Source of the DNA: Ylistrum balloti
Lineage: Eukaryota
DNA: 64,000 nt
Direction: 5' to 3'
NCBI RefSeq assembly: GCF_031769215.1
Contig: NW_026782196.1
Span: 930,001 to 994,000, forward strand
The first letter of the stretch is position 1. Each line of letters starts with the position of its first letter. Of the stretch, positions 22,501-57,445 are shown piece by piece. A program made the translations under genes and the position numbers. Under the pieces are notes generated by a model that did no database searches, was not told the origin of the DNA, and saw only the letters and a program-made list of their open reading frames with translations.

Positions 22501-22567
22501 TACCATTGAAGCCATCATGCGTTTTGTAGAAAGACACGAAAACACGGCGTTGAACACGGGAATCTAG
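19562..22567 (+). CDS. RO60-like: Divergent Ro60 (TROVE2)-like RNA-binding protein, TROVE plus vWA-like domain, ~521 aa; join(19562..19737,21178..22567)
   Basis: Exon 1 RLQSFLVLGTESGAY resembles the Ro60 motif RLHRFLCFGSEGGTY. The phase-2 junction AG|gtattg...tttcag|T continues into LIDLGDGPDVVKTI. Exon 2 contains YALALC...TKEAAY, GTGWGRAQRRAISDWYN, VTK...WTHKDIVRLSHVKP and a C-terminal LLNVIGFD, all collinear with Ro60. Confidence 0.9.
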
Positions 22568-26500: not shown

Positions 26501-29500
26501 GACAATTCATTAAGGTAAACTACAAAATCTATGTCTTTCACTGTGCTGAGTAAGCACCAGAGCTGGTCTCGTAAACTCTCTGTGTGAGAGCATTCGAGCA
26601 CGCTATGGATAATGATATCTTTATACTTGAAGCCACAGTAGTGACACAGGTAAATATTTTCATTTCGCGCATTTTAACGCTTAGTTTAACAATTCGTTTG
26701 ATATAAACACCATGTTGTGGAAAACGTAGAGCAAGTTTCCAAACCGGGTAAGGATGTATAGTGTTATGTAAGAGAATAAATCGAGAAAAATCACAATCTA
26801 CGTACATTCTTTCACATAATCTAGTTTCTTCATATTTTCTAACATGACCATTAATTAAAATCTTCTATTGTGATTTGTTAGGAAATACACCATTTTTCAT
26901 GAATTCAATAAGACATAGTACAAATTATATTTTTTTTAGAATATAAACAATATCAGGCACAAACCCTCTACTAAATGGGTCAGACTGAATTCAAATAACC
27001 GTTTAATAAAAATCTCGCATGTTAAATACCCCACATTCATTAAACAAATTCTACCAAGAAATTGCATTTTCTTTATACTGATATATACTTCAATTGAAAA
27101 CCACCCAAGCAAAGATGTAGACATGTCCGTTCTAGTTCTTAAATTGAAACCTTGAATTGATTTAACAATGAAATTCTGTGCCTTTCCTAACATATAAATT
27201 TCTCTTTGCTTTAACTGCCACAATTCACAACCATACAATGCTGAAGGGTAAACTTTAGACATGACTATTTTTGCAGTAGGTAGTTTATTTCTCTTTGCTT
27301 TAACTGCCACAATTCACAACCATACAATGCTGAAGAGTAAACTTTAGACTTGTCTATTCTTGCAGTATTGAAGGATTGAGCGTATATGGGTGTGCCCCAG
27401 AACGAATCAAAGACATTACTCCACACTTCAATATGGTGGCTGATATGTGCCATTTCATTATTTCGTTTTTTCGCCGCGAAAGAACGACAATTGTCGTTTT
27501 TTCGCCGCGCTAAACATCGTCTTTTCGCAGCAACAGAACGAAATAACGTAAGGCGAAATAACGAAAATATAAAGTCGCTGTTTGGCGACCCGAAATACTT
27601 TGCCCCGCCGTTTGTCGTTATTTCGCCCCGCCGTTTGTCGTTATTTCGCAGCGAAAAGACGACGTTTGTCGTTATTTCGCCCCGCCGTTTGTCGTTATTT
27701 CGCAGCGAAAAGACGACGTTTGTTGTTATTTCGCGGCAAAAAAACGAAATAACGAAATGGCACATATCAGCCACCATACTTCAACTTAGAACAAGCGCGT
27801 TCTGTGCGTTAGATATTATTATTTTTGCTGTTCAACGAAACACCAACATGTGTAATACTTTCAACAATTGGTAATTTCGAACCATACAGAGTCACATCAC
27901 ATGATACACTTGATTGGTTTTTGGAAGTGAAAATAAGGATCTTAGATTTAGCGGAAGAAATTTCCACTTTCGGCTGTATAACTCACAAAATGAGAGTAAA
28001 TGCTGTAAATCATAAACGCTGTTACTAACAAGACATATATCATCGGCTTGTGTGGGTATATCGACGCGTGAGGATAACACTACTGACCCTTTTCCGCTAG
28101 CTTCAACATGATTTAACAGACCATTTATAAAAACCAAATACAATTTCGCAGATAACGACCCACCTTGTAAAATCCCTCGCTTTATAGTTATATAATTTGA
28201 CTTAAAACCGTTGAAAATGACTCGACTAGTAAAATGAAAGTACATCTGATACATAATATTCCACGTTCTCCTTTTAATACCCAAGTTGTAAAGCTTATAG
28301 AATAGCCCGTCTTGTCAAACACAATCGAGGGCTTTATTACTATCTAAAAAGACAACAAACACTTCGGATGCATGGTCTAGATTATAATTGATGTTTTCTT
28401 GTAAATTAAAGGACGTACATAAACTACATAAATCCTTGCGATAGGCTGACTGGCGTCGGTTTGGAAATGAGTCTGACTCTAGGACTGGACTTAAACGGGT
28501 AGACAAAAAAGACTCAAATATTTTGAAAAATACAGGAATAAATGTTATGCCTCTGTAGCTGTTTGGATCGTCCTTCGGTTTCCGATTACCTTTGAACAGT
28601 GTAATTATCGTGCCCAATTTCCACGATTTTGGAATATATCCATACTTAACAATAATATTAAAAAGATATGTTATATGTGTGACAAGTGAACTGTTACAGT
28701 ATTTAACATGCTCAAACACAAGACCGTCTGGACCACCTGACTTTTTTGTTTTAAGACCTTTATATATCGAATAAATCTCTTCAAATGTAAACTCATTTTC
28801 TAGAAAGGTATCATGGTCAGTTTTGATGTTTTCCTTAATTGTCAATATATCATGTTGAACCTGATTTAAAGTATTAGCATCAAACATTTCGTTACTTTCA
28901 CTTTCAAAAAGCTTGCCAAAATGTTTACCCCATGCATTTACGATTTATCTCGGATCACGTAGGACCCGGCCATCATACTTCAACTCAGTCTGGGCTAATT
29001 TCGGTTTATGTGATTTACTTTTATATAATTGCCAGAATAGCGTTTGATCAACTTCACCGGACTGATCAATTTCAACAAATTGCCGACTCATATACTCGTC
29101 GAAAACATTTATTTCTAAAAATATTTTTGCATAATTTATAATCTAGAAAGTGAAAGTCATTACCTGAAAATAAACGTTATCTTTACACAATTTTCTTTTA
29201 AACAACATTTTGCTGTGTATCTCTGTTAATTGTTTGTTCCAATATGGTTTAAGATGTCCATTAAATGTACGTTTCTGAATGCAATGTTCTGACGCCTTTA
29301 ATAAAACATTTTTTAAACTTTCATAATATGAGTCAATCTCGTCATTCCATTTGATTTTCTCTGGAACAGTAATTAAACTGAGCTCAGAATCTACAATAAA
29401 CTTGTAATTGTTAATTTGACCATTATTCAATGCTTTCCGCCAGTTATATTTGGCATTATTTGTCCAATTGGTTAACGTAACTTGGGAATGTCGATACTAC

Positions 29501-31841
29501 AATAGACTGGGAGGTGATCTGATGAGTTTTCACCATCATCTAAGATTTCAGATTTTCTTACCAAATCTACCATACTACTTTCAACAACAATGTGGTCTAT
29601 TGTTGTACAGTTGCCAGAGACAGGACAGAAAGTGTATTAAGGCCCACTGCAATCACCTTGGACATTAACAGATACTTAATTATTTCTACTAAAAAAAGTT
29701 CCAAAAGCACTTGATCTAGCCTTACTGGGAAACTGATAATTTTCACGTTAAAGTCTCCAATAATTATAGCCCTCCCTTTTTCTAAATATACGGATACAAG
29801 AGATTCTAATGTATCTATAGTTTCCTTGAAAACATCCAAGTGTCTTAATGATGCTGGCATGTATACCGAAAAAAACATAGATGAAATTACGTTCAGATTC
29901 CAGAATCTCCATGCCAACCATTCGAGGACAATCTATAGTAATTTCCTGAACCCTTAAACTAGATTTGTACAGAATGCAAACGCCACCTCTAATATTGCAC
30001 GTATACCGAAACGGGTTTACCTTGCGGACTGGTTTTACAATGCATGAATAACCGGATTGGATGGAGGTATCAAAAAAGGACAAATGATATTCCCTTATCC
30101 AATGTTATGAGAGACTGCAAACATCAATTTTACGGTCTTCCAAACACTTTAACAAATATAGTTTACCTGACATTATTTACCATCCGGTATAGTAAAATAT
30201 AATATTACCCTGTTTATCATATAGTCTTTAATCAGTGTTATTTAAATTGAAACACGGTATAATGGATTTGAAGGAATTTGATGGAATGGAACATCGAGAA
30301 AGTGGTTTCTTATTATTAATCAGAATATCGGGTACCAATTGTATCTGTTTAAAACTAGTTCTGTTAATGAGATCGTTGTCCCTGGTTTTAAATTGATATA
30401 AAATACAGATACTTCATAACCATTTCCACTTCTTCAGAAATTTTTATTTTTATTTGCGTTTAAACTGAAAAGTTAATAATAAAAGAGAACAATGTATCTG
30501 TCGGTGATATACTCAATAAATTTATTTACCAGTTTATGAGGAACAGTTCGTGTTTAGTCAGTTCCGCCGTTATTGCTATAAGAGAAACAGACATTCTCGA
30601 AAGCTCGCAAAATACAGTTTTCAATTGTTGTTTATGTAACGATAAATATCTTCTTAAGTATTAATTACTTATACACTGTTTTAACGAACTATGATAACTT
30701 AATTAATAGTTTTAAATGACCGTCACACTAAACGTCAAAACACAAATTATTGATAATTTAACGAAATAGTTTTAAATGACCATCACACTCAACGTCAAAA
30801 CACAAATTATTGATAATTTAACTAAACAGATTTAAATGACCATCGCACTCAACGTCAAAACACAAATTATTGATAATTTAACTAAATAGATTTAAATGAC
30901 CATCGCACTCAACGTCAAAACACAAATTTTTGATAATTTAACTAAACAGATTTAAATAACCATCGCACTCAACGTCAAAACACAAATTATTGATAATTTA
31001 ACTAAATAGATTTAAATGACCATCGCACTCAACGTCAAAACACAAATTATTGATAATTTAACGAAATAGATTTAAATGACCATCGCACTCAACGTGAAAC
31101 ACAAATTATTGAAAATTTAACTAAACAGATTTAAATAACCATCGCACTCAACGTCAAAACACAAATTATTGATAATTTAACTAAATAGATTTAAATGACC
31201 ATCGCACTCAACGTCAAAACACAAATTATTGATAATTTAACTAAATAGATTTAAATGACCATCGCACTCAACGTGAAACACAAATTATTGATAATCTAAC
31301 GAACTATTTACAATAAATTACGACTACAACGCTAGTAACTGATGTTTCAATTCTAACTTATTAGTGTCATTTTTCAGATGATAACAGTAACACCTATCTG
31401 AATTTATTTCAATGAATGAATAAAGAACTCAATGAAAGCTCTTCATCAACATTTAACAAGGGACATATATAAACATGAACAACGTAATCCAATTTCGTAT
31501 ACCGTTATAGTAATAGAAACAAGTTTAAGCTGTTGAAGACATTCTACCCGGCAACCTGTCTGGTGAAAGCGATGATTTAATTAAGGTATCTGATAGACCG
31601 ATATGGAAATCGATTGTCTTTGTTTTACTTGATTGCTGTAAACATCGATCGAAGTACGTGTAATATTACATGTTATATTTCAAGATGTTCCTGGACATTT
31701 ATCGATCTGCTTTTTTCTCTAGACTAAACGTTATACGTGCGAATTAAATGCCTTCGATATATATATAATGAAAATATCAACAGCTCAGTGTCCGGTTCAA
31801 TATATGAGAATAATAATCAGAAACACGATGTGCATTATTAT

Positions 31842-31885
<44 letters not shown>

Positions 31886-34800
31886 ATGAATATTATGAGT
31901 GATTAAAGACAATTTAGATGGTGTTTTCCGTAATATTTTGCAGTTTTGGATTCAGTGATCGAAGCGAGTAGGACAATATAGATTTTCAATCAAGTACATT
32001 TAAATGTAAATACATGCTCTATAACAGACATTGTGAGATATATTACACAAGGGAACACTCAGGAATCAAGGAAATGAGCGTCATTCTGCTTGAGAAGAAA
32101 ATGACATTCATTAAAACAAATCTATATTAGTGAGACTCCAAAATCACCTTCCATTTCATAAAGTGATTTTTATTTATCAATATCGGTGTGTGTGCATTAT
32201 ATAACCTCTGTTTTTTCGATACGAATAATTATTAAGTATTTTTGCGTCTTCGTTACAACATATTTCGAATACTTAATTAAACTGCCCACGTTCAGATGTA
32301 CATTAACATGTAAAACAAGGAATCAGAGATGCTAATAATTCGGTCACGAAAAGTTGACCGATTTTTATACAAACAGGAAATGGAAATATCAGGTTTCGGA
32401 ATAATCGTCTTGATGTCTTCGAGTCTGTTCCGTTGTCTCATCTCAAATAAATCATTCAATATTCCAATAGGAAAATTAATTCAATGGAACACCAAGCTAA
32501 TAACATGGAAATATTGCAGGAGTGGTGGCCGATATGTACTACAGACATGGTATAAACGCCTTGATTGGACCGGCTTGTGCGTATGCATTGGATCCTGTAG
32601 GTCGTCTGGCCAACTACTGGAATATTCCGCTCATTACAGGTATACGTGTTACATTGTATCATTAAATATTACTGCATAGAATCTGAATATCGTCTGAATA
32701 AATACCAGTGGTCGATATTTATCCACATTACTGGTATGGGTGTAATTAAACACAGTGCGGAATAAAAATAGACAAATACAGGCGAATGATACTCAACATC
32801 GTTCGAACCCTGATGTGCTGGGTTTTACTTCGATTAGGAGATTACTTGTGTGGGACCCACAAATGAATTTAGTCGTATCTAGCATTTTGTTTGTATAACT
32901 GCCATAAAACTTTAGTGAAAAACCTAGCACTTTAGCATCACTGAGTCGTAGAAGGACAAAACAGCTGTATGATGTAGCATCACTGACGAGTCGTAGAAGG
33001 ACGAAACAGCTGTATGATGTAGCATCACTGACGAGTCGTAGAAGAACAAAACAGCTGTGTGTTGTAGCATCACTGACGAGTCAAAGAAAGACGAAAAAGC
33101 TGCATCATATAGCATCACTGACGAGTCTTAGAAGGACGAAATAGCTGTATGATGTAGCATCATTGACGAGTCGTAGAAGGACGAAACAGCTGTATGATGT
33201 AGAATCACTGACGAGTCGTAGAAGAACAAAACAGCTATGTGTTGTAGCATCACTGACAAGTCAAAGAAAGACGAAAAAACTGCATCATATAGCATCACTG
33301 ACGAGTCTTAGAAGGACGAAATAGCTGTATGATGTAGCATCATTGACAAGTCCAAGAAAGACGAAATAGCTGTATGATGTAGTATCACTGACAAGTCGTA
33401 GAAAGACAAAGCATATGTATGATGTAGCATCACTGACGAGTCCTAGAAGGACGAAACGTCTGTATGATGCAATTTAATTCATTATTTGACTCTACCCTGT
33501 CTTAAAATGAACTTTTCACTTTTGTGACTTTCGTACAGTCTTTCAGATTGCACATGTGAGACTTTGATTCCCCGAAATTTGCCGTAATGTGCAGTATGTA
33601 CACGGCACATTTAATTGATTTGAATTGTGTAGTGGCACGGTTCAGAATATACACTTGTACTTAGGACCTTTTGAAATTATCAGATGTATGAAAATAATAT
33701 ATGACATATGTTTTGATCATTTTGGATCATGTCTCAGTCGCCACTTGGTTAAAGATTAGTGTCCTTATCATCACTGACGTGTCCTAATAAATCGAAAATT
33801 CTGTATGATGCAGTTTAATTCATTATTTAACTCTACTGCACTTAATTCTAAATATGTATTAAAAAATTAATGACTTGTCTTTTTGTAATGACTGTGTAAA
33901 CACGAATTCATCGCAAATCTTCGCAACTTAAAATGTATCCAAATATCCTTTATCAAATTTTAAGGTCTGGGAGATGGTGGTATGTTTAAAAACAAGACCA
34001 ATTATCCAACCCTCACCAGACTTGCTTATTGCCAGTGTAGACTACGGAGGGTACTGGGTAGTATATTTGAGGAGTTTCATTGGACAGATGTAGCCATTGT
34101 ATATGACGTCAATGATGTTCACTCGGAAGTCCTCGGGTCCACCCTGAAGGTCGGTCTCCAAAAGCAAACTATATATCCTTTCATGTTTCCTTATTACGGA
34201 AAAGACAATCCCGATTTCAAAGCTATCCTTACAGAGGTCGCCATGGTTACTAGAGGTGAGAGATAATGATGTTGAGTGACGAAATATATTTATCTTTAGA
34301 ATTTCGAAAACCAGTGTATAGCTGAAGGCTGGATTTTATCATTTGAAGTCGAACAAATTGTTTAATTGTTGAAAACTGTTACCCACTTTATAGTTGGATA
34401 GAATGTAGTAAGTATTCTGTCATATAACAAATGGTTCCATGTTTATACTGATGTTTCAGAAGTATCTCAAGAACAATTGTATGATATCTGGCGTATTTAA
34501 CTGAATACTAACCGGTGTTTTGCAGTGATAGTCCTTGTTGCTCCTGGAGAGTCCGTGCGGAACCTCATGTTATCGGCTTTCGACCTTGGCTTTATAAACA
34601 CTGGCGAATTTGTTTTCTTCGATATCCATCTATTTTCTTTCCCTGGGGAATATTGGGGCAACCACGACTGGAGACGACACGACACACGTGACCAAGATGC
34701 CAGGAAATCATACGAAGCTATGTTTAGAATCAGTCTTCAAGTCCCGATAAGTGCCGAGTGGACGAACTTTACAAGAGAAGTCAAGTTGAAAGCTCAGCAA

Positions 34801-37800
34801 ATGTACAATTTCTCATTTTCTGACGAAGAGGTATTTTTTATTTTCTGGTGTATAGATTGCACACATCAATTTGATTTCGACATACTAAATACAAACATTC
34901 TAAAAATTCAATGTAACATATCAACACAGACAGCGATCCTTATTTCAATTGTAATATTAAGTGACACATCTATTGCTTTATACAAGCACCTTTTCTGTTA
35001 ACGTAAAGGTATTACATTTTGTAGTTCACCATTAGTTATTTAAATTATTATTCCTAATTGCATTCCTCATGGTAAGCTTGGCTAACCTTCTAAACTTAAC
35101 CCTATCTTATATTCCTAATTTCCAACATAAATACGTCTCTAGCATTCGTACCGGGATGCTTGATACTCGGCATGCTAAATATCTTCATATTTTATACCAA
35201 CAATCTTTGTGTTTTGTTGTCTGATTCTGATAGTAGTGGATACAAGTATATTTACGTAATAAAAATGACATTTCATCTTGTAATTTTGTCGGATAATAAA
35301 GAGTTTTGATGAACGTTGTCTCTCAAGCACTGGTAATATCTTCATGTTGGATTTTATCTTATAAGGTGAATTTTTTTATCGGAGCTTTCCATGACGCAGT
35401 GCTGTTATATGGAATCGCCCTAAACGAGAGTCTCAACAACATCTCAGCGCTAAACGACGGCTACACATTCACCAGAGCGATGTGGGACAGGACATTTCAA
35501 GGTACCGATACTGATTACCTTTCAAAATACCTACACGAGAACAAAGCAAAACATGATATTGATTAAATATCTATATCCGCGAATAAAGTCGTATTTTGGA
35601 ACACGTTTGCCATATCCGGAGACAGTTCCGTGAAAATTGTTTATTTCCGTCAATTTTTTAAGTCAAAGTTACTTCCGGTCTTCGATAAACGCGTGTTTAA
35701 CCATAAAACTCGCTTTTTCACAATTATATTCGTAAATTTACATCATTATCTCAGTTTATTCTATGTCGATCCTTAAACAATTGGTATCTTTTAAAAACTC
35801 GTCAAAAAGTTTTAACAAATTTTTTATTTGATGATGTTCCGAAGTGATGGAATGTACTGTAATGCTTTCAATAGATCTGATCCAGTTTTATTGATGTAGT
35901 TTGAAAAAAAGAAGGTTATGAACTTTGATTAACAATTTTTCATTTTTTTATCATTACTGTATAATAATGCAATATATCGACACAAACTGACGATTCCACA
36001 GATTGAAAATTCTCAGGAATAACAAAATAAAGAAAATCACGTGACTGGCATGGCTAAATTGCCATTTTTGGTCAAACTCGATATGGAACTATTATATTAA
36101 AATGATACAGTGGCTTGAATTTATCAAGTTACCACTGAACTGAAGGACATTAGTATCTCCCCATTACCATTCCTGATTATATCGTTATGGAAACTATAAG
36201 TGCTGATAAATATTGATGGTCTGCTATCACAACTAAACGTATAAAACCAAAATATTGGTGCCGAAGAGTTACCAGTTTCCAGTCATTATCATATAAAAGT
36301 GTAGTGATACATTATTTAATTACTTTTCACTCGATATCTGTGTTTTTATCGATGTCTTTGATGACAGTTTACGCGCTATCTACTCAAATATTTTAATCAT
36401 ACTAAAACGCGCACCACAGATCAGCTTAGAGGAATTCACGGTTCTGTGAAAGATTACTAGGAATAGTGGTAGGACAACAAAGAAACAAATATGTATGTGA
36501 TATGATTCCTGTCTGATATCTCAGCTGATCTTATCATTCTCCCCTTTATTCTTTTCTATGTAATCTCGTAATCGTGCATGCTGTCCTTACCTTTAAGCTT
36601 AAGGGCATGCTCCTCTAGTGTGTTGTGACGAAGTAGCATCTCCCATCTATCTAAGTTTTCTTATCTTGTAAGTTGCCGTTTTGATGCGTTTTTCGTCCTT
36701 TTTGATGTTCTGTTGTTTTATGATAGTTCTGAGTGCTAACACTGTAACATCTGGTACATTGAATTGTAAATGTTTAGTCTTACATGGTGGTGCCGTGTTT
36801 TCTTTTGACATTTTGTTGTTAGTGCTGTTGACAATTTTGTTCGAAGTGGTTTTTTAAATTATTTATACTGTCCCAAATTTTTGAGAGAACTATATTGTGT
36901 GCAATCACAGTATATCGGCATACAACATTCAATAGGCTGCTGAATGTAGTATATACATTCAATAGACTGCTGAATGTAGTAATCTATGTGGTATACTGTA
37001 AGTACTACCGACATCAACCTTTCTCTCTGTTGAAGATATCTTAATCGATGACCCCTTTATATTTTTTAATATCACAGGTGTAACCGGAAGTGTGATTATA
37101 GACGATAATGGGGATCGGGATACAAGCTATTCCATCCTTGACTTGGACCCAAACACAGGCGAATTTCACGTACGTCAAATGATATTTATCATGAACCATG
37201 CTACCTGCGATATATATATATATATACAAACACTTCAGAATAATACAAATATACTGTTTTAAATGAAGACCTATGGTTTTATTAATTCATTAATACTTTC
37301 TGCGGGTTTGGGGATATGACATACTGAAGACTGTGGATGAAACATGACCTCAATTATAGGTGTCAAAATTTGTCATTTACACGAATAAGGACGCGACTGA
37401 TGGGTTGTATGAATGAATAATTGATTTGTTTTCAAAGACCGTGAAATGTTCTTAACCAACATTTGTGATATTCGACGTTAAATTTTTGTTTTCAATGAAT
37501 TTTTACAATGTTTATATTACATCAGTTGACACATCTCTGATACAAGTTTGTACAGTAGCGACTCGTCAATGATATCGATATAGTGTAAACAGTATGGATT
37601 AAATGTACGTTACTGATTACTAACGGTCTCCTTGATTAGAGTTGTATACAGTCTAATGGCTAGTCGCATGGCAATTCGATATGTAACGCCTTTTAATTAA
37701 TAATATATAGATATTACATAATATATTTAATATTTATTTTCGTCACAATTAAGCGTAAAAGTACAACACAGCCATGCATGTGAGGGGCAAATATATTACC

Positions 37801-40800
37801 TGTTGATACTGACCACTTATCTAGGAGAAATACGCTGCACGGCACTTTACATCAAACAATACATTAGATACGTGAACCAGCTAGAGTCAGTCTTGTTTTC
37901 TCTCTGTACTTTTTTGTGCTTCTGAAGGAGTTGCTGGATTTTACAGCTGGAAACATTTATGATAAATTCACTCACGCATCCATCTCTTTTACGTTAAATA
38001 AAGATATTAAATATACACGTTAAGTGTATATTGTGGAAGCTGCAGCAGCTGGCTTTCGCATTCCAATAGAAGTTACAATTAAAGTATTCTTTAAAACGCT
38101 GTGGTAAGTGTTAAATTTATTTTGTAGATGATTTCTTGATGATGTATTTGAGATTTAATTTAGATCCAAGAATGATAACAAAAATCATACCGCAATTAAT
38201 TAATACATATTAAGGAATCCCCAGTCTGTCCACGTTTTACGTTTTAGCTGGACCAGACGTTTATCCAACGCATATGAAGTATTATAAAACGTGTATTCTA
38301 ACATAAACTCTTACTTCCATAAAGTATTAATTGTTATATGATATTCTTTTATAATAACGAATTATCATATATACTCTTATTCCAGCAGCTCCGGGCATCA
38401 TACATCCAAAATTGATCCCAATAATCATTTAACAATATCATTTGTACAATTCATGGACGAATAGAAATATTCATCGGTAGTCCCTACAAAATATTTCCAA
38501 AAACAGCATCATATTGAATTTAGATAAATCTAATGCATAATTTAGAGATAGAAGAACGGCATTTTACCGGGGATATCTGTGCTGTAGCGGTACAGTCGGC
38601 TATGATGTATAGGTATAAAAGTCATCATTTCCTTAGGCTAATGTCACTATAGGGAGTTGATGATAATGATTGTACAAAAAAATAAATACAATTCAATTCT
38701 GACCAACGTGAGATTCGGTGAGCTAGATATCATCCTTAAAACGAAAAAATACATTATACATATAAAATGATGTTACTGTAATAAGGAATACTACCAGAAA
38801 GGCTGGGATTTCATTCAGAAATGATCATAAGATGAAGTCGTGTATATCAGGACGAAACAAAGGGAAACTTAGACTAGAAACTTAACACGTTGTACATCAG
38901 TATTATATTACCAGACAGAGAGATATGACAAGGTGGCGTAGATTTTATTGGGATTCCTAGATATAGATATTAACTTTGTCAGCATGAAACCATGGAAAAA
39001 TCAATACTTTGGCTTCGGGCTCTTACAAAACAATATCCGTACCGTCCATCTCGAGCATATTTAGTAGAACTTTAGTCAGTATGTCGATAAAATGAAGTAC
39101 ATATTGAGCGATTTCTGAAGAACGTCAAGAACATCTGTGAATTCTGAACCGTGCCAGAAAACATTTGAATCAAAACGTGGCATGCAGGTTTTTTCCCATT
39201 TAAAGAATTAATTTTCTATAAGTCACCTAGAAGTATTCCAATACATTTTAAAGTATTGTCGCCTGTCACTGCCTAAAATTAAGTGTTTATGACCTTTCGA
39301 TATCGTTTCAGGTTATCGCTAACTTTTTCGGAGATCGACAATGGTACAATCCTGTTCCCACAAAGTCTGTCCACTGGGCTGGGGGCAGAACAGAACCCCC
39401 TCTTAATACACCTTCGTGTGGCTACCAGGGAGACGACCCTATGTGTTCTAAGAAATGTCAGTTGCTATTTCAGACAGTAAAGGCACATACTATGATATCT
39501 TGACAATTTCGTTTCTCTCCCGCCTCGAACACCAAAAGTGTAGAAAAGTCGTTAAAATACAATATACGAGAAGCAAAATTAATTTGTTATTATTTCTAAT
39601 ATACCAACATGTAATTGATATTTTAATGATATCTTTTTCATGATAATATAACACGATTTCTTTAAGTTTTGTCTTTAGACTAAATATATTATTAATTGCT
39701 GCCGTGAAATAAGAATGTTTAACGAACACCTTGTATCTTTCTGTTTATTAGATTTTTCATACGAACTGAAGAATGTTTAACGGACACCTTGTATCTTTCT
39801 GTTTATTAGATTTTTCATACGAACTCGTCTACGTTATAACTGCTATATCTACGCTACTCTTCGTCATTGTGTCTGGTGCTTTCATCCTTTTCCGGTAAGT
39901 TTTCATGACACATTACGATATTTTGATATAGACATACAAAGAGCTTAGTGAGTTCTATGTTAAACGTTGTAGAGGGAATGTTTACAATTTTCTAAAGACG
40001 TCTGGTTTTGGTGGTCCGTCATCGACGTCATAAAGTCTCGGCTGGTACGAAAATAAACAAACATTACAAAATAAATAGACATTACACATAAGGCAGATTA
40101 CCAGGACAATTACTGCAGTGTATAAGTAAATCGTTGATACATAAAACAGTTTAACGATTTGATTATAACTACACATTGACGGTGTAATTAATTATGTATC
40201 AGTGATTGATTTATCACCCGATTGTGTAGTACACTGTCTTGTCAAACATTATGTTCTGTTGAGGAGGAGGATGATAAACTTTCGATTTGATTAGACGTAA
40301 ATGACGTGTTTCGCACCAATTCTGGTGGGTATATACGATGGACATGGCCAATGTTTCTCGACAGGACCTCATAAATATATCTGAAAGTGAAATTGAAGAA
40401 CTTTGCAAGGTCTTTGTGACCAAAAAGATAAGGCCTTCGATAGACTAAGCCTTGTATGAAAGTTTCAAGAAGTCGGCGAACAACGAGACAGTTTGTTCTC
40501 ATACGTATGCCAATAGCCCTATGAAAGCTTGTACCTTCAGACGCGACGAAGATATTTTCAACCAGAAACTGGATCATTTGGGGAATTTTTCCTCCGTATA
40601 CTTCATTTTTGATTTGGACGTATTTTTGATGATATACGATTTAGTATATATCATATATATGTATCGCCGATTACCTTTATTAGAAAAGTAAAGTTTATTT
40701 ATCCAATATTGCCTTAATTGCATTGATAGTAATTTAATCAAGACACACGGGAAATTCTTTTCGAATTTTGGCAGGGCAAACTATTTTATGGAAGCCAAAA

Positions 40801-43800
40801 TATTTGTATTTTTTTCTTTCTGATAAAGGCATCTTCAAAGAGAGCGAGATCTACAAAATATGGCGTGGATGATAAAATATGACGACATTAACTTTCATGT
40901 CGATGGCTACAGTATGTCTGTAGGATCAGTGGTAAGTAACCGCCTTGTTACAGTATGTCTGTAGGATCTGTGGTAAGTAACAGTCTTGTTACAGCATGTC
41001 TGTAGGATCAGTGGTAAGTAACCGACGCCGCCTTGTTACAGTATGCGTGTAGGATCAGTGGTAAGTAACCGCCTTGTTACAGTATGCGTGTAGGATCTGT
41101 GGTAAGTAACAGACGCCGCCTTGTTACAGCATGTCTGTAGGATCAGTGGTAAGTAACCGCCTTGTTACAGTATGTCTGTAGGATCAGTGGTAAGTAACCG
41201 CCTTGTTACAGCATGTCTGTAGGATCAGTGGTAAGTAACCGCCTTGTTACAGCATGTCTGTAGGATCAGTGGTAAGTAACCGCCTTGTTACAGCATGTCT
41301 GTAGGATCAGTGATAAGTAACCGCCTTGTTACAGCATGTCTGTAGGATCAGTGATAAGTAACCGCCTTGTTACAGCATGTCTGTAGGATCAGTGGTAAGT
41401 AACCGCCTTGTTACAGCATGTCTGTAGGATCAGTGGTAAGTAACCGCCTTGTTACAGCATGTCTGTAGGATCAGTGGTAAGTAACCGCCTTGTTAGAGCA
41501 TGTCTGTAGGATCAGTGGTAAGTAACCGCCTTGTTACAGAATCACGGTAAGATCAGCGATATGTAGTCGACACCGTCTTGCAACGTTGAAAACGACCATT
41601 AGAAGAAGTCATATACACTGTTATATTGTTTGGAGGATTATTTTTTAGTATTTCAGAGGAAGGTATAACTTAAAGACAAGTCATCAACATAATGGAAATA
41701 GATTGATTTAAAAAAACATAACATTTTCAGACACCTATCAGTGAAAAGTCAGGTGATTTTGTCTCTGATACTTCTGCTTATCACAGTTAGTAGTAAATGG
41801 AATCTAGTAACCAATAGTCTGTACATATTCACAATATATTTTCACTACCAAACCCTACACATTGAGATACATGAACCTGCCAAGGAGTTAACCGCCAGTA
41901 TATACATAGTATACATAGGTTCTACACCTGGTTGGCAAAGTAACGCTTTACCAGTATCAAAACATAAAAATCAAGGATGGAGGGCGGGTTGTAAATGTAC
42001 GCGAATCCAAACTCACTTTTATTTTTCCTGTCGTATCTTTGTATAATTTGTATATCACTGCTGTAGTCGTTTTATATATGCTTTTTATGTGTCGGTTCAA
42101 TGTAGAATAACGAGTCAGTTGTATCGCATTAAAATTGCTATAACAGTTCGATTTAATGAGTACTATGCATGGATTGTTTCAGCCAAGCTGCATTGCCTCC
42201 TCGATATCCCGAAGGTCCTCTCGATACAACACTGACCTGACCGGGACCCAATTCCTAGCTGGATTCGCAACATACAGGGTGAAGAATCAAGACACTAGTT
42301 TAAAGAACACCTATTTATAGTTTGAAATTCCTGATACATACATGGGATATACATTACACGGCATTTGTTTAAATATTTCTGTTTAATTTTGTTTCATGTT
42401 TTCAGTTTGCATCGCGAAGTTAGCTCTGAGTTACGTTGCTTTTTTTATTATATTCTTTAATGATGTGAATTTGCAACACTGCTTTAAACAGTTAGACATT
42501 GTCACGAGACAATGATATACATTCCAAAAACTAACGCCCATACAACAGGATATGTTTTCTGTTTGGATTCTATAGTTATGTTTTCTAAATTCGGGTTAAC
42601 ATTTTCCATGGGAGCGGGGACATGAATGTTTCGCAGACGTTTTCTAGTTGTATTTTCTATGTCTTGTATTCTTTCAACTCCAGATACGTAATGCTTGCTC
42701 CGTTTTAATCTATTTGAATAGTGGCACAGTACAATATATATATGTTCTTGATGTTCTTTCGAAATTAGCAGATGTATGAAATTACGAAATGATTTGAATT
42801 ATAGGGCTACTGCATCTCCCCATCTAGCTTTTGAGATTTCCCTCGGTCAGTTGGATTCTCAGTCGCCTCCCATGTTTCAAATTTAGTATCTCTACATGCC
42901 TAGATGGACGAAACACCTGTATGATTCAATTAATTATCTTTTTTGAGGCTGTATTCAATTCTAAATTTGTATCGAAAGACTGTATTCACTCTTGTGGATG
43001 TTCTACAATTTCAGTTTAGGTCAAACACGGATTATTTTGCAGAAAACGAAAGGTATCTACGAGTAATATATTTGTGATCAAACTAGACGCTACTTACTAC
43101 AGCGGGATATTGCTATGTCACTGTATGACTGTTCATTGTATTCCCGGTTTGTAATCTGCCTGTGCCGTCCTCTGCAATAAAGATAATTTGATCATGACAG
43201 TAATAGCTTAGCTTGTCAGTCACGTAGTACGTTCATCAATGAGAATGTGATGACTCTAGAGCGGTATTAAACTCATTAGCGGAGAACGACTATATAACAA
43301 CATGACATGGCACTATTAGATATAAAGGTATTTCTGAGCAGTTTTAACTCCGTATTTGGAAGGAAACAATAATACACGACATGACTGATATACAAATGTA
43401 TCTATTCTGTATTGGAAGCAGTAAACTAGGGCATATTGTAACATGCACGGGTGTCTGTAGTTGTATGTATAGGCATATAACTGTGTTGGTTGATGAAATG
43501 ATCTTCCTTACAAGATTCCAATTTTGTCTTAAAGTTATAAGTTTTGTGAGGAAGACTTAAGGAATGAATTTCACAAATCGCTGTTTTAAAGTGTTGATGT
43601 AAAACTTGTAAAATGCATTTGCTCTTGTATGACCAGGGATCACCAGTTTCTGTCAGAATGGTACGACAGAGGAAGATAGATTTGTCAAGAAATGTACTTA
43701 AAGAACTACAACAGGTGCGTTCCTTTAACAGAGGTGATCGTTGATTAGAATTGATCGTATAATATCAACAACAATTAATTATCACGGCTTATATTTGAAA

Positions 43801-46800: not shown

Positions 46801-49800
46801 ACTGTACACCGCGTCTGTGTATCGATCTGGTCAACAAACCAACAACATCTTATCTTATAATAGCTACTGTCGCTATATTTACTCATTCCAAATGTGCGAT
46901 GGTTTATTTTACATCCCGAAATAGCATGTAAACAAATAAATCATACATTGGGGTACGTAAATATACAATTGGCGCTGGAATTGCACTGATGTACACCAAG
47001 AAATAGGTAGTTAATGCTCTTAGAACTTGTTCGATATATCACATTTCAATATCAACAATTGTGAGAACGATTACACATCTTTGAAGGTAATATGATCAGA
47101 ACAAATCTAATTTTTCTTTTGTATAGAGATTGTAGAAAAAATAAAAGAGAGGGACGAGCCACTGTTTCGCCCGATTGTCCCTAAAGACCATGGTTCAGCC
47201 GAACTCATTGATTTGCTGACAAGATGTTGGGCGGAGGACTCGGAGGATCGGCCTGATTTCCATAGTATTCTGAAATCTCTACGGAAGATGATGGGGTATG
47301 TGCATTTCACATCAATATCTTTTTTTGTCTGGGAAAATTTGTTTTGCTTAATTAAATATACAAAATTTCAAAACTTGGCACGAATGACAAAATGTGTGTC
47401 TGCAATATATCCCGAATCGGATTTATATTTAATACGTAACTACAATCGGACAACAGGACAGTGTGAGTGACGACACATACAATTTTGATGTCATCATTCT
47501 TTGCAGGACGAAACATACAAACTTCGTAGACATGCTGTTGCACAGGATGGAAAAGTACGCTACAAACCTTGAGGATATTGTGGAGGAGCGTACACAGCAA
47601 CTGTTGGTAGAGAAGAAACGCTCTGAGGAACTTCTACACCAAATACTTCCAAGGTCTATAACCACCGTCAACCACAGAATAATGTAGATCAATATGTTGT
47701 TTCGTTGAGGATATTTCACCACGAATAAAGTTCCTTTTTAGAAATTCAATATAAAAGACCACTACAAGGAGCGATGCACTCAGAAAAAATTAGCATAAAA
47801 AGTGAGAGCATACGATTATGTACTCCACTTAAATAAAAAAAAATCGTAATAATTTTCATTTCAGGTTTTTATAATTATATCACAATCATACACAAGGTTG
47901 AAAAAAAATTTCCATCTGTTTTTTGTGTATTTGATGAAGCTGACTAATTTCTGATTTGTAAGTTACGGAATTAACTGTACTTGATTGGTTAGTAGTTCTA
48001 TAAATGTTCGAAACTCAAAATCCCACGCCATTGAAATTCTGATGTAAACGCAGAAATAGCAATATGGTTCAGAATATACACATGTAATTGATGTTCTTTT
48101 GAAATTATCCTATACAGGAAAAGAACAAAATTTATTATTGAGGTTATTAAGGTAGTACATTAGTCCATCTAGATTTTGACATTTCTTCCATCAGGTTTTC
48201 ATTTTCTTCATTTGCGCCTTGAATTTCGAAATTTAGGACCTCAGCATTACTGGCGAGTCCCAGAAGGACGACACAGTTGTACGATGCAATTTAATGGATT
48301 GTTTGGCTCTGATGTATCTAATTTTAAATGCGTGGGTTTAAAATAAGCGATAAGTACGTATCTATTTTATTTTAGGAGTGTGGCAAGAGATCTACTGCAA
48401 GGTCGACATGTGTTGCCAGAAAGCTACAGTTCAGTCACAATTTACTTCAGTGACCTGGTGGACTTTACAAGCTTGTGTTCAAAGCTGACCGCGCTGCAGG
48501 TACAAGCATACAGATATAAATCGATATCGTAAACTATGAAATAAGCATTAAAAGATTGAAGTGTTTTGTTTGCAGGTTTATCGAAGGATTAATTTCAATA
48601 TGGTAACGATATTTAAATGGACAGTAAAGACAAATACTAACACCATTCTGAACTTTTGCCTTCGATAAAACTAACAAAAATGTACTTTTATTTCTAATGT
48701 GGATTTTAAAATTCTTAATTTCATTTTTTTTCAGTAAGAGTTCGTAGAACTCGCAGAGGTCTAATTAAAAATTATCGTTTAGTTCGGTAGACTTTTGCAT
48801 TTTTGCATTGTGCCAACTGATGCACGGACTTTCCGCCGCCAATTTATCTGTAAACAAGTAAACAGAAGAGTTCCAAGAGATTAAATCGTTTTATTGTTTT
48901 TTGCCACACGCACATCTAGAATAGTTTGTTTTGTATTCTTATACAAATTGTATTTAGAAGAACAGTATTAAGTATGCTGTTCATACAAACCGTTTGACGT
49001 CATAGCTGTTTTTCCAAACATATGGCGGCATGATAATTGCTCGTAGTTTTGACGCCGTCTCGAATTTAAATCGTACTAGACAAGACATGAGTGATGGCCA
49101 TGCTTATTAAAATCGATTTACTATCTTTGGACGGTTTTGTTCATACCGATGAAGCTTTTTTTCTAGTCGGATGATAATTGTTTTAGGAATGAGTTCTCAC
49201 AAATATCTTGTTCCTATATACATTGTTTCCCAAACAGCGTCACGCACGTGCTGTATGGAGAAGACTGGACACCTTGAGATGACAAAGATCGGAGATATGA
49301 GCGCATGTTTATATATGTATGGAAGAAAGTTGGTCTTTTTCCCTATATATTTCCACGAAACTTGACGGCATTTAGGAGGAACATGTTATTCGTGTTTATC
49401 TGTTATATAAGATTTTGGTATCAAGGTTTTATTCACAGAGAGAACTGTGTTACATTACATATAATGTTTACATAAGTTATCGTAACACATTTTTATTATA
49501 TTTTGAAGGTGATTGACGTTCTCAATGAAGTGTATACACTGTTTGATAACATAATAGACAAGTACAACGTATATAAGGTGAGTCTGGAAAAGGACACGCA
49601 TTTTACTTCTTTAACTTTTGTTATTTTCAAAGTTGACTAAAATCCTTTTTAGTATCATGGTATCATGGGTAAGAATTGTACTTAAAGGTATGAGTATAAA
49701 TAAGTGTAAAACAATCTAGTTTCCTTTTTTTCAAAAAAAGAAAGCATTTCTAACCTGAGATGCCATTTTTTACAAGATCAGAATGTCATTGACAATAGGA

Positions 49801-52800
49801 TTTATAACTGAGTAGGACACGGTGCAGCCAAGATAAGTCTTCTCAATAGAAATATCGCATATAAGTCATTGCATATCTGATTGACCTTTTACCCCAAATA
49901 AAGCTAACAGCTCTTCGTGAAATTATTGTATATCTACAAGATTGTACAAAAGACGCATAAGTAAATAGCACATTTAAATACAAATACTGATTGGAAAGTA
50001 GAGCGAAACTTCATACAATGTTTAGTCCCTATAGAACTGGTCAGTTATGCTACATCATACAGCTGTTTCGTCCTTATAGGACTGGTCAGTTATGCTACAT
50101 CATACAGCTGTATTGTCCTTATAGGACTGGTCAGTTATGTAACATCATAAAGCTGTTTCGTCCTTATAGGACTGGTATGTTATGCTACATCATAAAGCTG
50201 TTTCGTCCTTATAGGACTGGTCAGTTATGCTATATCATACAATGTTTTGTCCTTATAGGACTGGTCAGTTATACTACATCATACAATGTTTCGTCCTTAT
50301 AGGACTGGTCAGTGATGCTACATCATACAGCTTTTTCGTCCTTATAGGACTGGTCAGTAATGCTACATCATACAGCTGTTTCGTCCTTATAGGACTGGTA
50401 TGTTATGCCACATCATAAAGCTGTTTCGTCCTTATAAGACTGGTCAGTGATGCTACATCATACAATGTTTCGTCCTTATAGGACTGGTCAGTGATGCTAC
50501 ATCATAAAGCTGTTTCGTCCTTATAGGACTGGTCAGTTATGCTACATCATACAGCTGTTTCTTCCTTATAGGACTGGTCAGTTATGCTACATCATACAAT
50601 GTTTCGTCCTTATAGGACTGGTCAGTTATGCTACATCATACAGCTGTTTCATCCTTATAGGTCTCGTCAGTTATGCTACATCATAAAGCTGTTTCGTCCT
50701 TATAGGACTCGTCAGTTATGCTACATCGTATAATGTTTCGTCCTTATAGGACTGGTCAGTTATGCTACATCATACAATGTTTCGTCCTCATAGGACTAGT
50801 CAGTTATGTTAAGGGATAAAAACAAAACTAATATAATTTTGTTTTGTATAAAAGCCGTGGACATGTTGAGTTACGTATCATTTGTAAAGAAAATATCTCA
50901 ACTCAAACTGACAAAAATACATATGGAGCATAATCTCATCTATGAAGTTAAACTTCAGACATTGCTGTTTTTCTCTTCTGATGTTATTTGATAGGTTGAA
51001 ACAATAGGGGACGCTTATATGGTGGCGTCCGGTCTTCCTATTCGTAACGGGACGCAGCACGTGACGGAAATCTGTCGTATGGCTTTGGACTTGCTCGACC
51101 AAATTTCAAGTCATACTTTGAAACACAATGTTGTGGACAAAGTGAAACTACGTATCGGTATACATACAGGTAAGTAAAGTTGATTAAGGGGGGACAAGCA
51201 AAACATGCATGAGCTTTCATACACATCGATGAAATGATCAAAACCAAATTAATAATAGCCTTAACCTGTTTAATAAAGCTTGGGATTCGGTTCATGGTGA
51301 TTTAGTCATATATATATACATAGAAACACAAATGATCGTAATCACCTTTTGTATTCAAGAGTTACACCCACATTTTTGTTCCCGTAACAGGTCCCTGTGT
51401 AACAGGAGTTGTAGGACTGAAGATGCCAAGATATTGTCTGTTTGGTGACACTGTCAATACGGCATCCAGAATAGAAACAACAGGCTCTGGTAAGTAACAG
51501 TGGTAGACAGTTCATTACAGTAAGGAAACAACAGGCGCTGATAGGTAACAGTGGTAGACCGTTCATTACAGTAAGGAAACAACAGGCGCTGATAGGTAAC
51601 AGTGGTAGACCGTTCATTACAGTAAGGAAACAACAGGCGCTGATAGGTAACAGTGGTAGACCGTTCATTACAGTAAGGAAACAACAGGCGCTGATAGGTA
51701 ACAGTGGTAGACCGTTCATAACAGTAAGGAAACAACAGTAGCTGATAGATAACAGTGGAAGACAGTTTATCATCGTATCACAAGGTTTTATTCACTATTG
51801 TTTTGTTTTTGTTTTTGGGGTTGTTTGCTTTTTTACAACATCTTCCACAAACGAGGATGATGTAAATGGCTTGTTTGTGCCAGAAACTGTTTATAGACAC
51901 TGAATTTTCTCACGAAACAATTAACTTGTATTTAGAACACGTATAAATTAGAGTAGAAGGCATGCGAGATTTGACATCAGTGGGAAAACATGAGTTTGAA
52001 TATTGATTCAAACTTTGAGTATTTCCGTGTGAACTAGGTTATAGGGCTGTCATTACCGTGGAATTATCAGACACTGAAAAACACCAAATTGAAATTTCCT
52101 TTGGTTTGTAGCGTTGAAGATACACATTAGTGAGGCAACAAAGAAGGCTATGGATGACACGGGCTTGTTTAACGTGGAATGTCGTGGGCAAATAAACATC
52201 AAGGTAAGGGCTCCATTTAACGTTACTAATAATACATCAAAATGAGTTTAAAAGGTTAGTATAAAATAAACATATATTGAATGTAAACTTAGTCTAACAT
52301 AAACATCTATTGGGCTGTAAACTTGGAATTATCAGACACTGAGATAAACATCTATTGGGTGAAATTTCCTTTGGTTTGTCGTTGGAAGTACACATTAGTG
52401 AGGCAACAAACATCTGTGGATGACAACTTGTTTACATCGTGGAATGTCGTGGGCAAATAAACATCAAGGTAAGGGCTCCATTAAACGTTACTAATAATAC
52501 ATCAAAATGAGTTTAAAAGGTTAGTATAAAATAAACATATATTGAATGTAAACTTAGTCTAAGATAAACATCTATTGGGTGTAAACTTGGTCTGAGATAA
52601 ACATCTATTGGGTGTAAACTTGGTCTGAGATAAACATCTGTTGGATGTAAACTTGGTCTGAGATAAACATCTGTTGGGTGTAAACTTGGTCTGAGATAAA
52701 CATCTATTGGGTGTAAACATGGTCTGAGATAAACATCTATTGGGTGTAAATATAAATCTGGTAAATTTAGCTTTACAAAACAGAGAGGTTTATTCCAGGT

Positions 52801-57159: not shown

Positions 57160-57445
57160 ATAAGATGATAATGTATTTATAAAGATACCAAGCTATAGTC
57201 TGTTTTGAAATCCCTATATAAGATGATAATGTGTTTATATAAGATACCAAGCTATAGGCTGTTTTGAAATCCCTATATAAGGTGATAATGTGTTTATATA
57301 AGATACCAAGCTATAGTCTGTTTTGAAATCCCTATATACGGTGATGTGTTTATATAAGATACCAAGCTATAGGCTGTTTTGAAATCCCTATATAAGGTGA
57401 TAATGTGTTTATATAAGATACCAAGCTATAGGCTGTTTTGAAGGT
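57160..57445. repeat. 59-bp minisatellite, 5 copies
   Basis: gataccaagctata recurs at offsets 59, 59, 56 and 59. Confidence 0.92.

What the first reader, a model, noticed from the sequence alone, without database searches (positions are those of the whole stretch)
32935..33470. A 45-bp 'minisatellite' that is a tandem array of minimal hammerhead ribozymes, sense-oriented inside a guanylyl-cyclase intron
SEEN: every 45-nt unit is essentially one type I hammerhead. Unit 32977-33020 has stem I GCAUCA/UGAUGU, core CUGACGA, stem II GUC/GAC, GAAA, and stem III AC-[AGCU]-GU, then A17, with predicted cleavage after 33014. Units 33112 and 33292 have a U15.2-G16.2 wobble. Unit 33427 has a perfect stem I, a 4-bp stem II and a non-palindromic loop III. 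Unit 33157 has U3. The other seven units carry core mutations. ESTABLISHED: minimal hammerheads with a very short stem III and a palindromic loop are associated with Penelope-like elements and cleave as dimers; tandem hammerhead repeats in metazoans (non-LTR retrozymes) yield small circular RNAs, with monomers I recall as roughly 170-400 nt. INFERENCE: here the ribozyme alone has been amplified head-to-tail with no cargo. Neighbouring units could supply dimer partners in cis, cut the nascent cyclase pre-mRNA in intron 2, and release 45-nt-multiple fragments or circles.
Basis: partly seen in the sequence, partly recalled or inferred. Interest (0 to 1): 0.93.

Follow-up and report, generated by a model that had tools for sequence, protein, structure and literature searches.

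The report
Hammerhead-ribozyme minisatellite inside a mobile element
This 540-base repeat is twelve back-to-back copies of a 45-base self-cutting RNA motif, but it is one decayed copy of a mobile-element family found thousands of times in this genome and appears to have grown as ordinary repeat DNA, with no sign that it regulates the cyclase gene.

Summary
Window 32932-33471 holds 12 head-to-tail 45-bp units, each a complete type I hammerhead. Four units keep an intact core, and a fifth has the U3-A8 variant. Neighbouring units can pair their palindromic loops into a 7-8 bp helix III, which gives Rfam type III hits (E about 1e-7, below the gathering score).

The gene-specific reading is not supported. 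The array is one copy of a genome-wide family. The exact core 25-mer occurs 3,918 times. The family is a roughly 0.3-kb non-autonomous element (head, one hammerhead, tail) whose hammerhead module has expanded to 6-60 units at many loci. At least five more pieces of the family lie in this window.

Expansion looks DNA-level. The array has a 180-bp higher-order repeat. Arrays fixed for dead cores (G12A, G17, G8C) are as long and uniform as live ones. Core positions are no better conserved than loops.

One new point: array units are about three times less diverged than the flanks of the same copies, and arrays at different loci share polymorphisms. Arrays therefore evolve in concert across loci or were installed later.

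No RNA data exist. Other agents of this scan reached similar readings on other arrays of this genome. I rate it a new variant of a known kind, of moderate interest.

The parts
32932..33471 (+). Array of 12 head-to-tail 45-bp hammerhead units. The first unit has a 3-nt deletion in the core.
   Evidence: TRF period 45, 11.7 copies, plus a 180-bp higher-order repeat; register and unit table.
32977..33021 (+). Unit with an intact type I hammerhead core. Predicted cut after 33014.
   Evidence: no core or site problem, stem I 6/6, stem II 3/4.
33112..33156 (+). Intact unit with a U15.2-G16.2 wobble. Predicted cut after 33149.
33292..33336 (+). Intact unit, the 180-bp higher-order paralogue of unit 33112. 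Predicted cut after 33329.
   Evidence: Rfam Hammerhead_1 25.1 bits at 33292-33335.
33337..33381 (+). Unit with U3 plus A8, a possible compensated core pair.
   Evidence: It is the only U3/A8 unit among 500 units examined. The covariation is reported in natural hammerheads in PMC4209133.
33427..33471 (+). Intact unit with a perfect stem I, a 4-bp stem II and a non-palindromic loop III. Predicted cut after 33464.
32961..33013 (+). Junction-spanning (type III topology) hammerhead. Helix III is formed by the palindromes of two neighbouring units (8/8 pairs) and helix I is the junction hairpin. Predicted cut after 32969.
   Evidence: Rfam Hammerhead_3 42.3 bits, E 1.8e-7 at 32962-33012; the centroid fold contains it.
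33411..33463 (+). Second complete junction-spanning hammerhead (helix III 7/8 pairs). Predicted cut after 33419.
   Evidence: Rfam Hammerhead_3 42.5 bits, E 1.6e-7 at 33412-33462.
33466..33550 (+). 3' tail of the carrier element. The family consensus ends ...TCTTTTGTACAAT.
   Evidence: nhmmer with the tail profile, E 8.8e-8; tail alignment.
33624..33864 (+). Second copy of the carrier in the same orientation, with a single decayed hammerhead (33768-33812) between a partial head (33624-33700) and a tail (33807-33864).
42694..43011 (+). Further carrier copy (head 42694-42885, tail 42949-43011) with room for about one very decayed unit.
   Evidence: nhmmer head E 3.3e-29, tail E 1.4e-5.
48052..48329 (+). 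Further single-unit carrier copy (head 48052-48247, unit 48244-48288, tail 48283-48329).
49929..50808 (-). Inverted array of about 18 units with its tail. This is a subfamily variant with G8 changed to C and a mismatch in stem I.
   Evidence: TRF 50011-50808, period 45, 17.9 copies; sequence; array consensus; tail 50056-49929.
39111..39185 (-). Fragment of a carrier head.
   Evidence: nhmmer E 2.8e-6.

Best explanation
The array is the expanded hammerhead module of an old, short, non-autonomous mobile element. The basic element is about 0.3 kb: a head of 200-240 bp, one 45-nt type I hammerhead, and a tail of 85-100 bp ending in TCTTTTGTACAAT. Because the hammerhead unit has no spacer and a palindromic loop III, a tandem duplication produces RNA in which neighbours can complete each other as double or type III hammerheads. 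The growth of the arrays themselves is a DNA-level minisatellite process (unequal exchange, slippage or conversion) that does not depend on cleavage. Arrays at different loci are kept similar to each other by exchange between loci, or were installed into older carrier copies later. The copy in the cyclase intron is a decayed passenger. A few of its units could still cleave in principle, probably weakly, but nothing indicates a role in the gene.

Shown here: the anatomy, the family, the decay pattern, and that arrays are younger than their flanks. Inferred: the DNA-level mechanism, the retroelement nature of the carrier, and the lack of function.
For: - Family and carrier. The own-genome search gives 189 scored matches out of 1,821 candidates, on many contigs. 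The exact core 25-mer occurs 3,918 times against 0 for the control. The head has 718-1,268 candidate sites, and the tail is conserved. Copies with exactly one unit between head and tail exist.
- Truncated copies. Some copies are 5'-truncated but keep the tail.
- Fold. The consensus multimers fold by minimum free energy into nested double hammerheads.
- DNA-level growth. The array has a 180-bp higher-order repeat. Arrays are fixed for G12A (46 units), for G17 (three arrays) and for G8C. Of 430 units, 47% have an intact core, against 51.5% expected from uniform decay. Core positions are not better conserved than loops. There are no compensatory double changes. The window holds at least 12 unrelated 30-60-bp minisatellites.
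- Concerted evolution. Pairwise identity is 88-89% for first and last units but 64% for the adjacent 45 nt of head and tail in the same copies. Solitary units show 70%. Locus L032's flanks have no close sibling anywhere, although its array is 97-99% consensus. The same polymorphisms (G1A, A38G, T44C, C31T) are seen in 10-16 of 22 arrays.
- Passenger status. At least five more pieces of the family lie in this window. This copy is the most decayed of the 22 arrays sampled.
Against: - No RNA data were available, so activity in vivo is neither shown nor excluded.
- The family consensus is still a perfect hammerhead, although the flanks have diverged greatly. That suggests the motif is or recently was under selection somewhere, for example in a master element.
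- The autonomous partner was not found. No Penelope-like ORF lies within about 4 kb of the 21 arrays examined.
- The exact termini and target-site duplications of the carrier stay fuzzy.
- The flank-versus-unit comparison rests on about 20 loci chosen as best matches to this window.
Confidence: 0.72

Rival explanations
1. The sense-oriented array acts in cis on the guanylyl cyclase pre-mRNA. Neighbouring units dimerise, cut the nascent intron, lower or gate expression, and release 45n-nt fragments or circles.
For: Four or five units and two junction-spanning hammerheads are intact on the sense strand. The double-hammerhead fold is thermodynamically favoured for the consensus sequence. Intronic hammerheads are known in other animals (my own knowledge, not checked here).
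Against: The array is the most decayed of the 22 sampled. The same gene carries three more sense copies and one dead antisense array, so insertion looks tolerated rather than selected. Minimal hammerheads without loop-loop contacts cleave poorly even as dimers (PMC4209133). A 2026 preprint reports vertebrate hammerhead repeats as depleted from introns (10.64898/2026.07.22.740005). No RNA evidence exists.
Confidence: 0.1
2. Arrays are made through RNA. Array or unit transcripts self-cleave to 45n-nt RNAs and circularise. Rolling-circle reverse transcription then yields tandem cDNA, which converts resident single-unit copies by homology. This would explain young arrays in old carriers.
For: Units are about three times less diverged than the flanks, with a sharp boundary at the array edges. 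Polymorphisms are shared across loci. The pool consensus is still a perfect hammerhead and differs from the solitary-unit consensus at one position only. Circular-RNA intermediates are the accepted model for retrozymes (PMC7229834).
Against: Arrays fixed for G12A, G17 or G8C cannot self-cleave, yet they are long and uniform, and the G17 variant is shared by several loci. The higher-order repeats (180 bp here) are a DNA-level signature. Many unrelated minisatellites in the same window show that this genome expands 30-60-bp units anyway.
Confidence: 0.1
3. The carrier is not a retroelement. It is a rolling-circle (Helentron-type) or MITE-like DNA transposon with a central tandem repeat, as described for several bivalve satellite carriers.
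For: The architecture is left flank, central tandem repeat, right flank, with variable repeat number. No poly(A) or simple-repeat tail is present and no tRNA-like head. Some copies are 3'-truncated.
Against: 5'-truncated copies that keep the tail are more frequent (about 7, against about 4 that are 3'-truncated). A hammerhead near the 3' end and short tail pieces upstream of the head (partial tandems) resemble Penelope-like elements (PMC8557442). No terminal inverted repeats or 3' hairpin were seen.
Confidence: 0.12
4. The array encodes a 15-residue repeat peptide, since 45 bp equals 15 codons and arrays are open reading frames of up to 588 codons.
For: Long open frames run across arrays.
Against: The frames are open in several phases and on both strands. 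A search of 5.8 billion proteins with a 487-aa array ORF found nothing. The arrays sit in introns and intergenic DNA.
Confidence: 0.01

Closest known systems
Non-LTR retrozymes of metazoans (tandem repeats with type I hammerheads; Cervera and de la Pena 2020, PMC7229834)
   Same: Tandem repeats that carry a type I hammerhead with a weak helix III. They are dispersed through an invertebrate genome, and a mollusc example is known (a mussel).
   Different: Known monomers are 150-450 bp with non-ribozyme cargo and give 170-400-nt circles. Here the monomer is the 45-nt ribozyme alone, and the arrays sit inside a carrier whose other parts lie outside the repeat. Expression as circles is untested.
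Minimal or small hammerheads of Penelope-like elements that act as dimers (PMC4209133; Lunse et al. 2017, cited in PMC6765202)
   Same: A short helix III with a palindromic loop lets two copies share an extended helix III. The motifs are mostly dispersed as non-coding copies. A hammerhead lies near the 3' end, and there are signs of partial tandem insertion.
   Different: No reverse transcriptase plus GIY-YIG ORF was found next to any of the 21 copies examined. Helix II is 4 bp, not 7-8 bp. Back-to-back arrays of up to 60 units were not described in the papers I could read.
Schistosoma Sm-alpha / Sj-alpha SINE-like hammerhead retroposons (reviewed in PMC6765202)
   Same: A short (about 0.3 kb) non-autonomous dispersed or tandem element that carries one hammerhead.
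   Different: Those elements have a pol III promoter, and the whole element forms the repeat unit. Here no tRNA-like or other known pol III head was detected, and only the ribozyme is repeated.
Newt satellite 2 and the double-hammerhead model (Forster et al. 1988, cited in PMC4209133)
   Same: Satellite transcripts whose hammerheads need a neighbour to form a stable helix III.
   Different: The newt monomer is about 330 bp. Here the partners are immediately adjacent, 45 nt apart.

Membership tests
Hammerhead ribozyme (Rfam clan CL00010: RF00163 type I, RF00008 type III) | Conserved core C3 U4 G5 A6 N7 G8 A9 ... G12 A13 A14, the A15.1-U16.1 pair, and H17 not G | tested here: met
   Met in 4 of the 12 window units, plus one unit with U3-A8. 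The family consensus built from 488 units is a perfect core.
Hammerhead ribozyme (Rfam clan CL00010: RF00163 type I, RF00008 type III) | Three helices around the core | tested here: met
   Stem I is 6 bp, or a 5-bp junction hairpin. Stem II is 3-4 bp. Stem III is 2 bp plus a palindromic loop, or 7-8 bp between units.
Hammerhead ribozyme (Rfam clan CL00010: RF00163 type I, RF00008 type III) | Score at or above the Rfam gathering threshold | tested here: inconclusive
   Window units fall below it: 42.5 against 48.5 bits, and 25.1 against 34 bits. Family members at other loci pass: type I up to 38.2 bits, type III 49.0 bits.
Hammerhead ribozyme (Rfam clan CL00010: RF00163 type I, RF00008 type III) | Self-cleavage at H17 | not testable with these tools
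   No RNA run holds the locus. An in vitro assay is needed.
Hammerhead ribozyme (Rfam clan CL00010: RF00163 type I, RF00008 type III) | Covariation that supports the helices | tested here: not met
   Among 500 units there are almost no double compensatory changes. Variation looks like neutral decay. The structure rests on the match to the known model only.
Non-LTR retrozyme | Tandem monomer of 150-450 bp made of cargo plus one type I hammerhead | tested here: not met
   The monomer is 45 bp with no cargo. The range for known members comes from PMC7229834.
Non-LTR retrozyme | Accumulates as small circular RNA | not testable with these tools
   No RNA data.
Penelope-like element pseudo-LTR hammerhead | The hammerhead lies in repeats that flank an ORF encoding reverse transcriptase plus GIY-YIG | tested here: not met
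   No such ORF lies within about 4 kb of the 21 arrays. The only reverse-transcriptase ORFs seen are LINE-type. GIY-YIG ORFs exist elsewhere in the genome but could not be fetched.
Penelope-like element pseudo-LTR hammerhead | Short helix III with a palindromic loop that permits dimers | tested here: met
   The ACAGCUGU palindrome is present, and the consensus dimer folds as a double hammerhead.
SINE (pol III-derived head) | Head derived from tRNA, 5S or 7SL RNA | tested here: not met
   ARAGORN finds no tRNA-like sequence. Rfam in E-value mode finds nothing in the head.

The most novel reading that the evidence does not exclude
The 45-nt hammerhead arrays form a genome-wide pool that is renewed through RNA. 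Multimeric transcripts process themselves into 45n-nt RNAs or circles, which would be the smallest ribozyme-bearing circles known. Their tandem cDNAs overwrite resident copies by homology. This would explain why arrays are about three times younger than their carriers and why the pool consensus is still a perfect ribozyme.
Probability: 0.1. Interest if true: 0.85.

Novelty: new variant of a known kind. Interest (0 to 1): 0.5.

Why it matters
Ribozyme-bearing repeats in animals are known as units of a few hundred bases that carry cargo. Here the repeat unit has shrunk to the ribozyme itself, and I estimate roughly 13,600 units in one genome.

That gives a natural concatemer of complete hammerheads. 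Each neighbour supplies the missing helix III. This makes it a ready test case for three questions:
- whether dimer-type hammerheads work in vivo;
- whether very small ribozyme circles exist;
- how a functional RNA motif behaves once it becomes a minisatellite.

The finding that arrays are much younger than the elements carrying them points to exchange between dispersed arrays. That can be tested by comparing related species. For the cyclase gene itself, the array is most likely irrelevant.

Tried and rejected
- RNA evidence. When laid on the locus, X1 behaves like whole-genome DNA contigs: unique flanks at depth about 10 and repeat words at very high depth. It says nothing on expression.
- Autonomous partner. 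ORFs within about 4 kb of 21 arrays gave only LINE-type reverse transcriptase and an unrelated Mab-21 gene.
- Whole-element tandems.
- Coding reading. A 487-aa array ORF found no protein among 5.8 billion.
- Other species. Two metagenome scans with unit patterns found nothing.
- Literature. Searches by sequence, and by hammerhead plus scallop, bivalve or Crassostrea, found no description of this repeat. Lunse et al. 2017 is not held, so I cannot exclude that such arrays are among their roughly 150,000 variants.
- Upstream exon. The candidate at about 23.6-23.83 kb had no Pfam or PDB match, so the intron number is unverified.
- Target-site duplications and exact termini could not be settled.
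- Selection on the core. The U3-A8 pair occurs once in 500 units, with no enrichment.
Full report
**Observation**

Window 32932-33471 is a tandem array. Tandem Repeats Finder reports period 45, 11.7 copies and 83% matches, and also a 180-bp (four-unit) higher-order period at 91%. In register, each unit reads stem I 5' strand, CUGANGA, stem II hairpin, GAAA, a 2-bp stem III with a 4-nt palindromic loop, H17, stem I 3' strand, and one junction base.

- Intact cores: units 32977, 33112, 33292 and 33427.
- U3: unit 33157.
- Core or cleavage-site damage: the remaining units.
- Unit 33337 combines U3 with A8, a core covariation reported from natural hammerheads (PMC4209133). It is the only such unit among the 500 I examined, so it carries no statistical weight.

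**Match to known hammerheads**

Rfam in E-value mode gives three Hammerhead_3 hits (42.5, 42.3 and 33.3 bits; E down to 1.6e-7) and Hammerhead_1 hits (25.1 bits). All are below the gathering scores.

The type III hits are informative because they span a unit junction. Helix I is the hairpin formed by the end of one unit and the start of the next. Helix III is formed by the CAGCUG palindromes of two successive units (7-8 bp). Two such junction-spanning ribozymes are complete in the window, cutting after 32969 and 33419.

The family consensus folds by minimum free energy exactly as the classical double hammerhead when taken as a dimer, and as nested double hammerheads when taken as a 4-mer or 6-mer. 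The real 540-nt sequence folds better than shuffles (z = -4.2) but into a mixed structure. Better-kept family members at other loci pass the Rfam gathering scores (type I up to 38.2 bits against 34; type III 49.0 against 48.5). No window unit does.

**It is a dispersed family inside a carrier**

A 180-bp piece of the array finds 189 scored matches out of 1,821 candidates across many contigs of the 648.5-Mb assembly. The exact 25-nt core plus stem II occurs 3,918 times, against 0 for the reversed control. Since 29% of the units I sampled carry that exact word, this extrapolates to roughly 13,600 units. Arrays have 6-60 units.

The arrays share flanks:
- a head of about 200-240 bp (718-1,268 candidate sites);
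- a tail of about 85-100 bp ending in TCTTTTGTACAAT.

The contigs of run X1 give the same head and tail consensus at the array borders.

Copies with exactly one hammerhead between head and tail exist. One lies just downstream of the array, at 33624-33864. The window holds further pieces at 42694-43011, 48052-48329 and 39111-39185, and the inverted array at 49929-50808.

Some copies are 5'-truncated inside the array or inside a single unit but keep the tail. Several copies carry a short piece of the tail end upstream of the head, or two tails in a row. This recalls the partial tandems and terminal extensions of Penelope-like elements (PMC8557442).

I found no tRNA-like head. I also found no Penelope-type ORF within about 4 kb of the 21 arrays; the only reverse transcriptases seen are LINE-type. 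So the carrier is best called a short non-autonomous element, probably a retroelement, with an unknown partner.

**How the arrays grow**

Four lines of evidence point to DNA-level expansion that is indifferent to catalysis.
- The window array contains a duplicated four-unit block.
- Whole arrays are fixed for inactivating changes: G12A in 46 units at L029, G17 at L026, L034 and L035, and G8C in the window's inverted array. These arrays are as long and as uniform as arrays with live cores.
- Across 430 units, 47% keep an intact core, against 51.5% expected if changes fell evenly. Core positions are no better conserved than loop positions, and double compensatory changes are essentially absent.
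- The same 64-kb window holds at least a dozen unrelated minisatellites with 30-60-bp units, so this genome expands such units routinely.

**Arrays are younger than their carriers**

In the same copies, the first and last units of different arrays are 88-89% identical pairwise. The 45 nt of head or tail that touch them are only 64% identical. Measured against consensus, the figures are 94% and about 76%. The drop is abrupt at the array edge, because edge units are as well kept as inner ones.

Solitary units in single-unit copies are as diverged as the flanks: 70% pairwise and 82% to consensus, from five copies. Locus L032 has an array 97-99% identical to the consensus, yet its head and tail have no close sibling anywhere in the genome. 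Locus L030's partial head reaches at most 88%. The same variants (G1A, A38G, T44C, C31T) segregate in 10-16 of the 22 arrays.

In-place turnover cannot keep an array near the family consensus while its flanks drift. So either arrays exchange sequence between loci, or they were installed into older copies later. The pool consensus is still a perfect hammerhead. It differs from the solitary-unit consensus only at position 44. This suggests selection on the motif somewhere, for example in a source element.

I cannot tell whether the exchange runs through DNA (ectopic conversion, extrachromosomal repeat circles) or through RNA and cDNA. The spread of the uncleavable G17 variant over several loci argues against an obligatory self-cleavage step.

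**Gene context**

The + strand carries a receptor guanylyl cyclase gene. ANF_receptor exons lie at 33982-34266, in 34525-35001 and in 35306-35566. A cyclase-domain exon lies at 51342-51494.

The first of these exons starts at profile position 87, so earlier coding sequence must lie upstream, and the array is very probably intronic and sense-oriented. A candidate upstream exon at about 23.6-23.83 kb resembles natriuretic-peptide-receptor N-termini from my memory, but it had no Pfam or PDB match. 'Intron 2' is therefore unverified.

The same intron also holds a LINE on the - strand (26936-30083) and other satellites. With three other sense copies and one antisense array of the family in this gene, and this array being the most decayed of the 22 sampled, a dedicated regulatory role is unlikely. 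No RNA run was available to test cleavage.

**Comparison with known systems**

Known animal hammerhead repeats have 150-450-bp monomers with cargo and give circles of 170-400 nt (PMC7229834). Penelope-like elements carry minimal hammerheads that act as dimers, with low activity in vitro (PMC4209133, PMC6765202, PMC7761336). Schistosome SINE-like elements carry one hammerhead behind a pol III promoter (PMC6765202).

The present family works like these, with helix III completed by a neighbour. It fails the defining features of each one: monomer size and cargo, a flanking reverse transcriptase / GIY-YIG ORF, and a pol III head. I found no description of back-to-back, cargo-less hammerhead arrays in the library. 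However, Lunse et al. 2017 could not be read.

**Earlier notes of this scan**

One search shows that other arrays of this same family were followed up by other agents. They reached similar conclusions: DNA-level expansion inside a mobile element, and many dead units. One of them names the organism as a scallop. I did not verify the organism. The flank-versus-unit age gap is, as far as those notes show, new here.

**Verdict**

This is a new variant of a known kind, of moderate interest.

Noticed in passing
window 49929-50808 (- strand): A second, inverted array of the same family, about 18 units, in a later intron of the same gene. It is a subfamily with G8 changed to C (CUGACCA) and GCAUAA in stem I, and it has a mixed 44/45-bp register (134-bp higher-order period). 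Together with the sense array it forms a long inverted repeat pair around most of the gene's exons.
   Followed up: partly
window 33337-33381: A unit with both U3 and A8. This is the core covariation reported as a natural hammerhead variant in schistosome Penelope-like elements. It is the only such unit among the 500 examined.
   Followed up: yes
window, whole (e.g. 2659-3522, 4365-4796, 6972-7281, 15980-18670, 24168-24725, 25006-26092, 30692-31300, 40908-41539, 51474-51767, 52531-52750, 57150-57442): The window is unusually rich in unrelated minisatellites with 30-60-bp units. One is another 45-bp repeat with no hammerhead (6972-7281). Another is a 40-bp array of about 67 units (15980-18670).
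   Followed up: no
window 26936-30083 (- strand): A degraded LINE with endonuclease/exonuclease/phosphatase and reverse-transcriptase pieces, in the same intron as the array.
   Followed up: partly
window 21155-22564 (+ strand): An intronless 470-codon open frame with a TROVE domain and a weak Ro60 vWA match, just upstream of the cyclase gene. It could be a Ro60/TEP1-like gene or a retrocopy.
   Followed up: no
loci L029, L035, L031, L026 and others (arrays): Because 45 bp equals 15 codons, the arrays are open reading frames of up to 588 codons in several phases and on both strands (for example repeats of [15 protein letters not shown]). No homologous protein was found.
   Followed up: yes
G000 C422:240415-261997 and C129:50248, 67535: GIY-YIG matches inside 755-codon open frames. 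On C422 they repeat every 5.36 kb. They could be tandem Penelope-like elements or a tandem gene family. The sequence could not be fetched.
   Followed up: no
G000 C19:1174706-1175810: Exact consensus cores spaced exactly 180 bp apart, seven times. This is a four-unit higher-order repeat like the one in the window array, at another locus.
   Followed up: no
L032:1-2046 (- strand): A 682-codon open frame with Mab-21 nucleotidyltransferase and Mab-21 C-terminal domains (cGAS/Mab21-like), about 1.3 kb from a hammerhead array.
   Followed up: no
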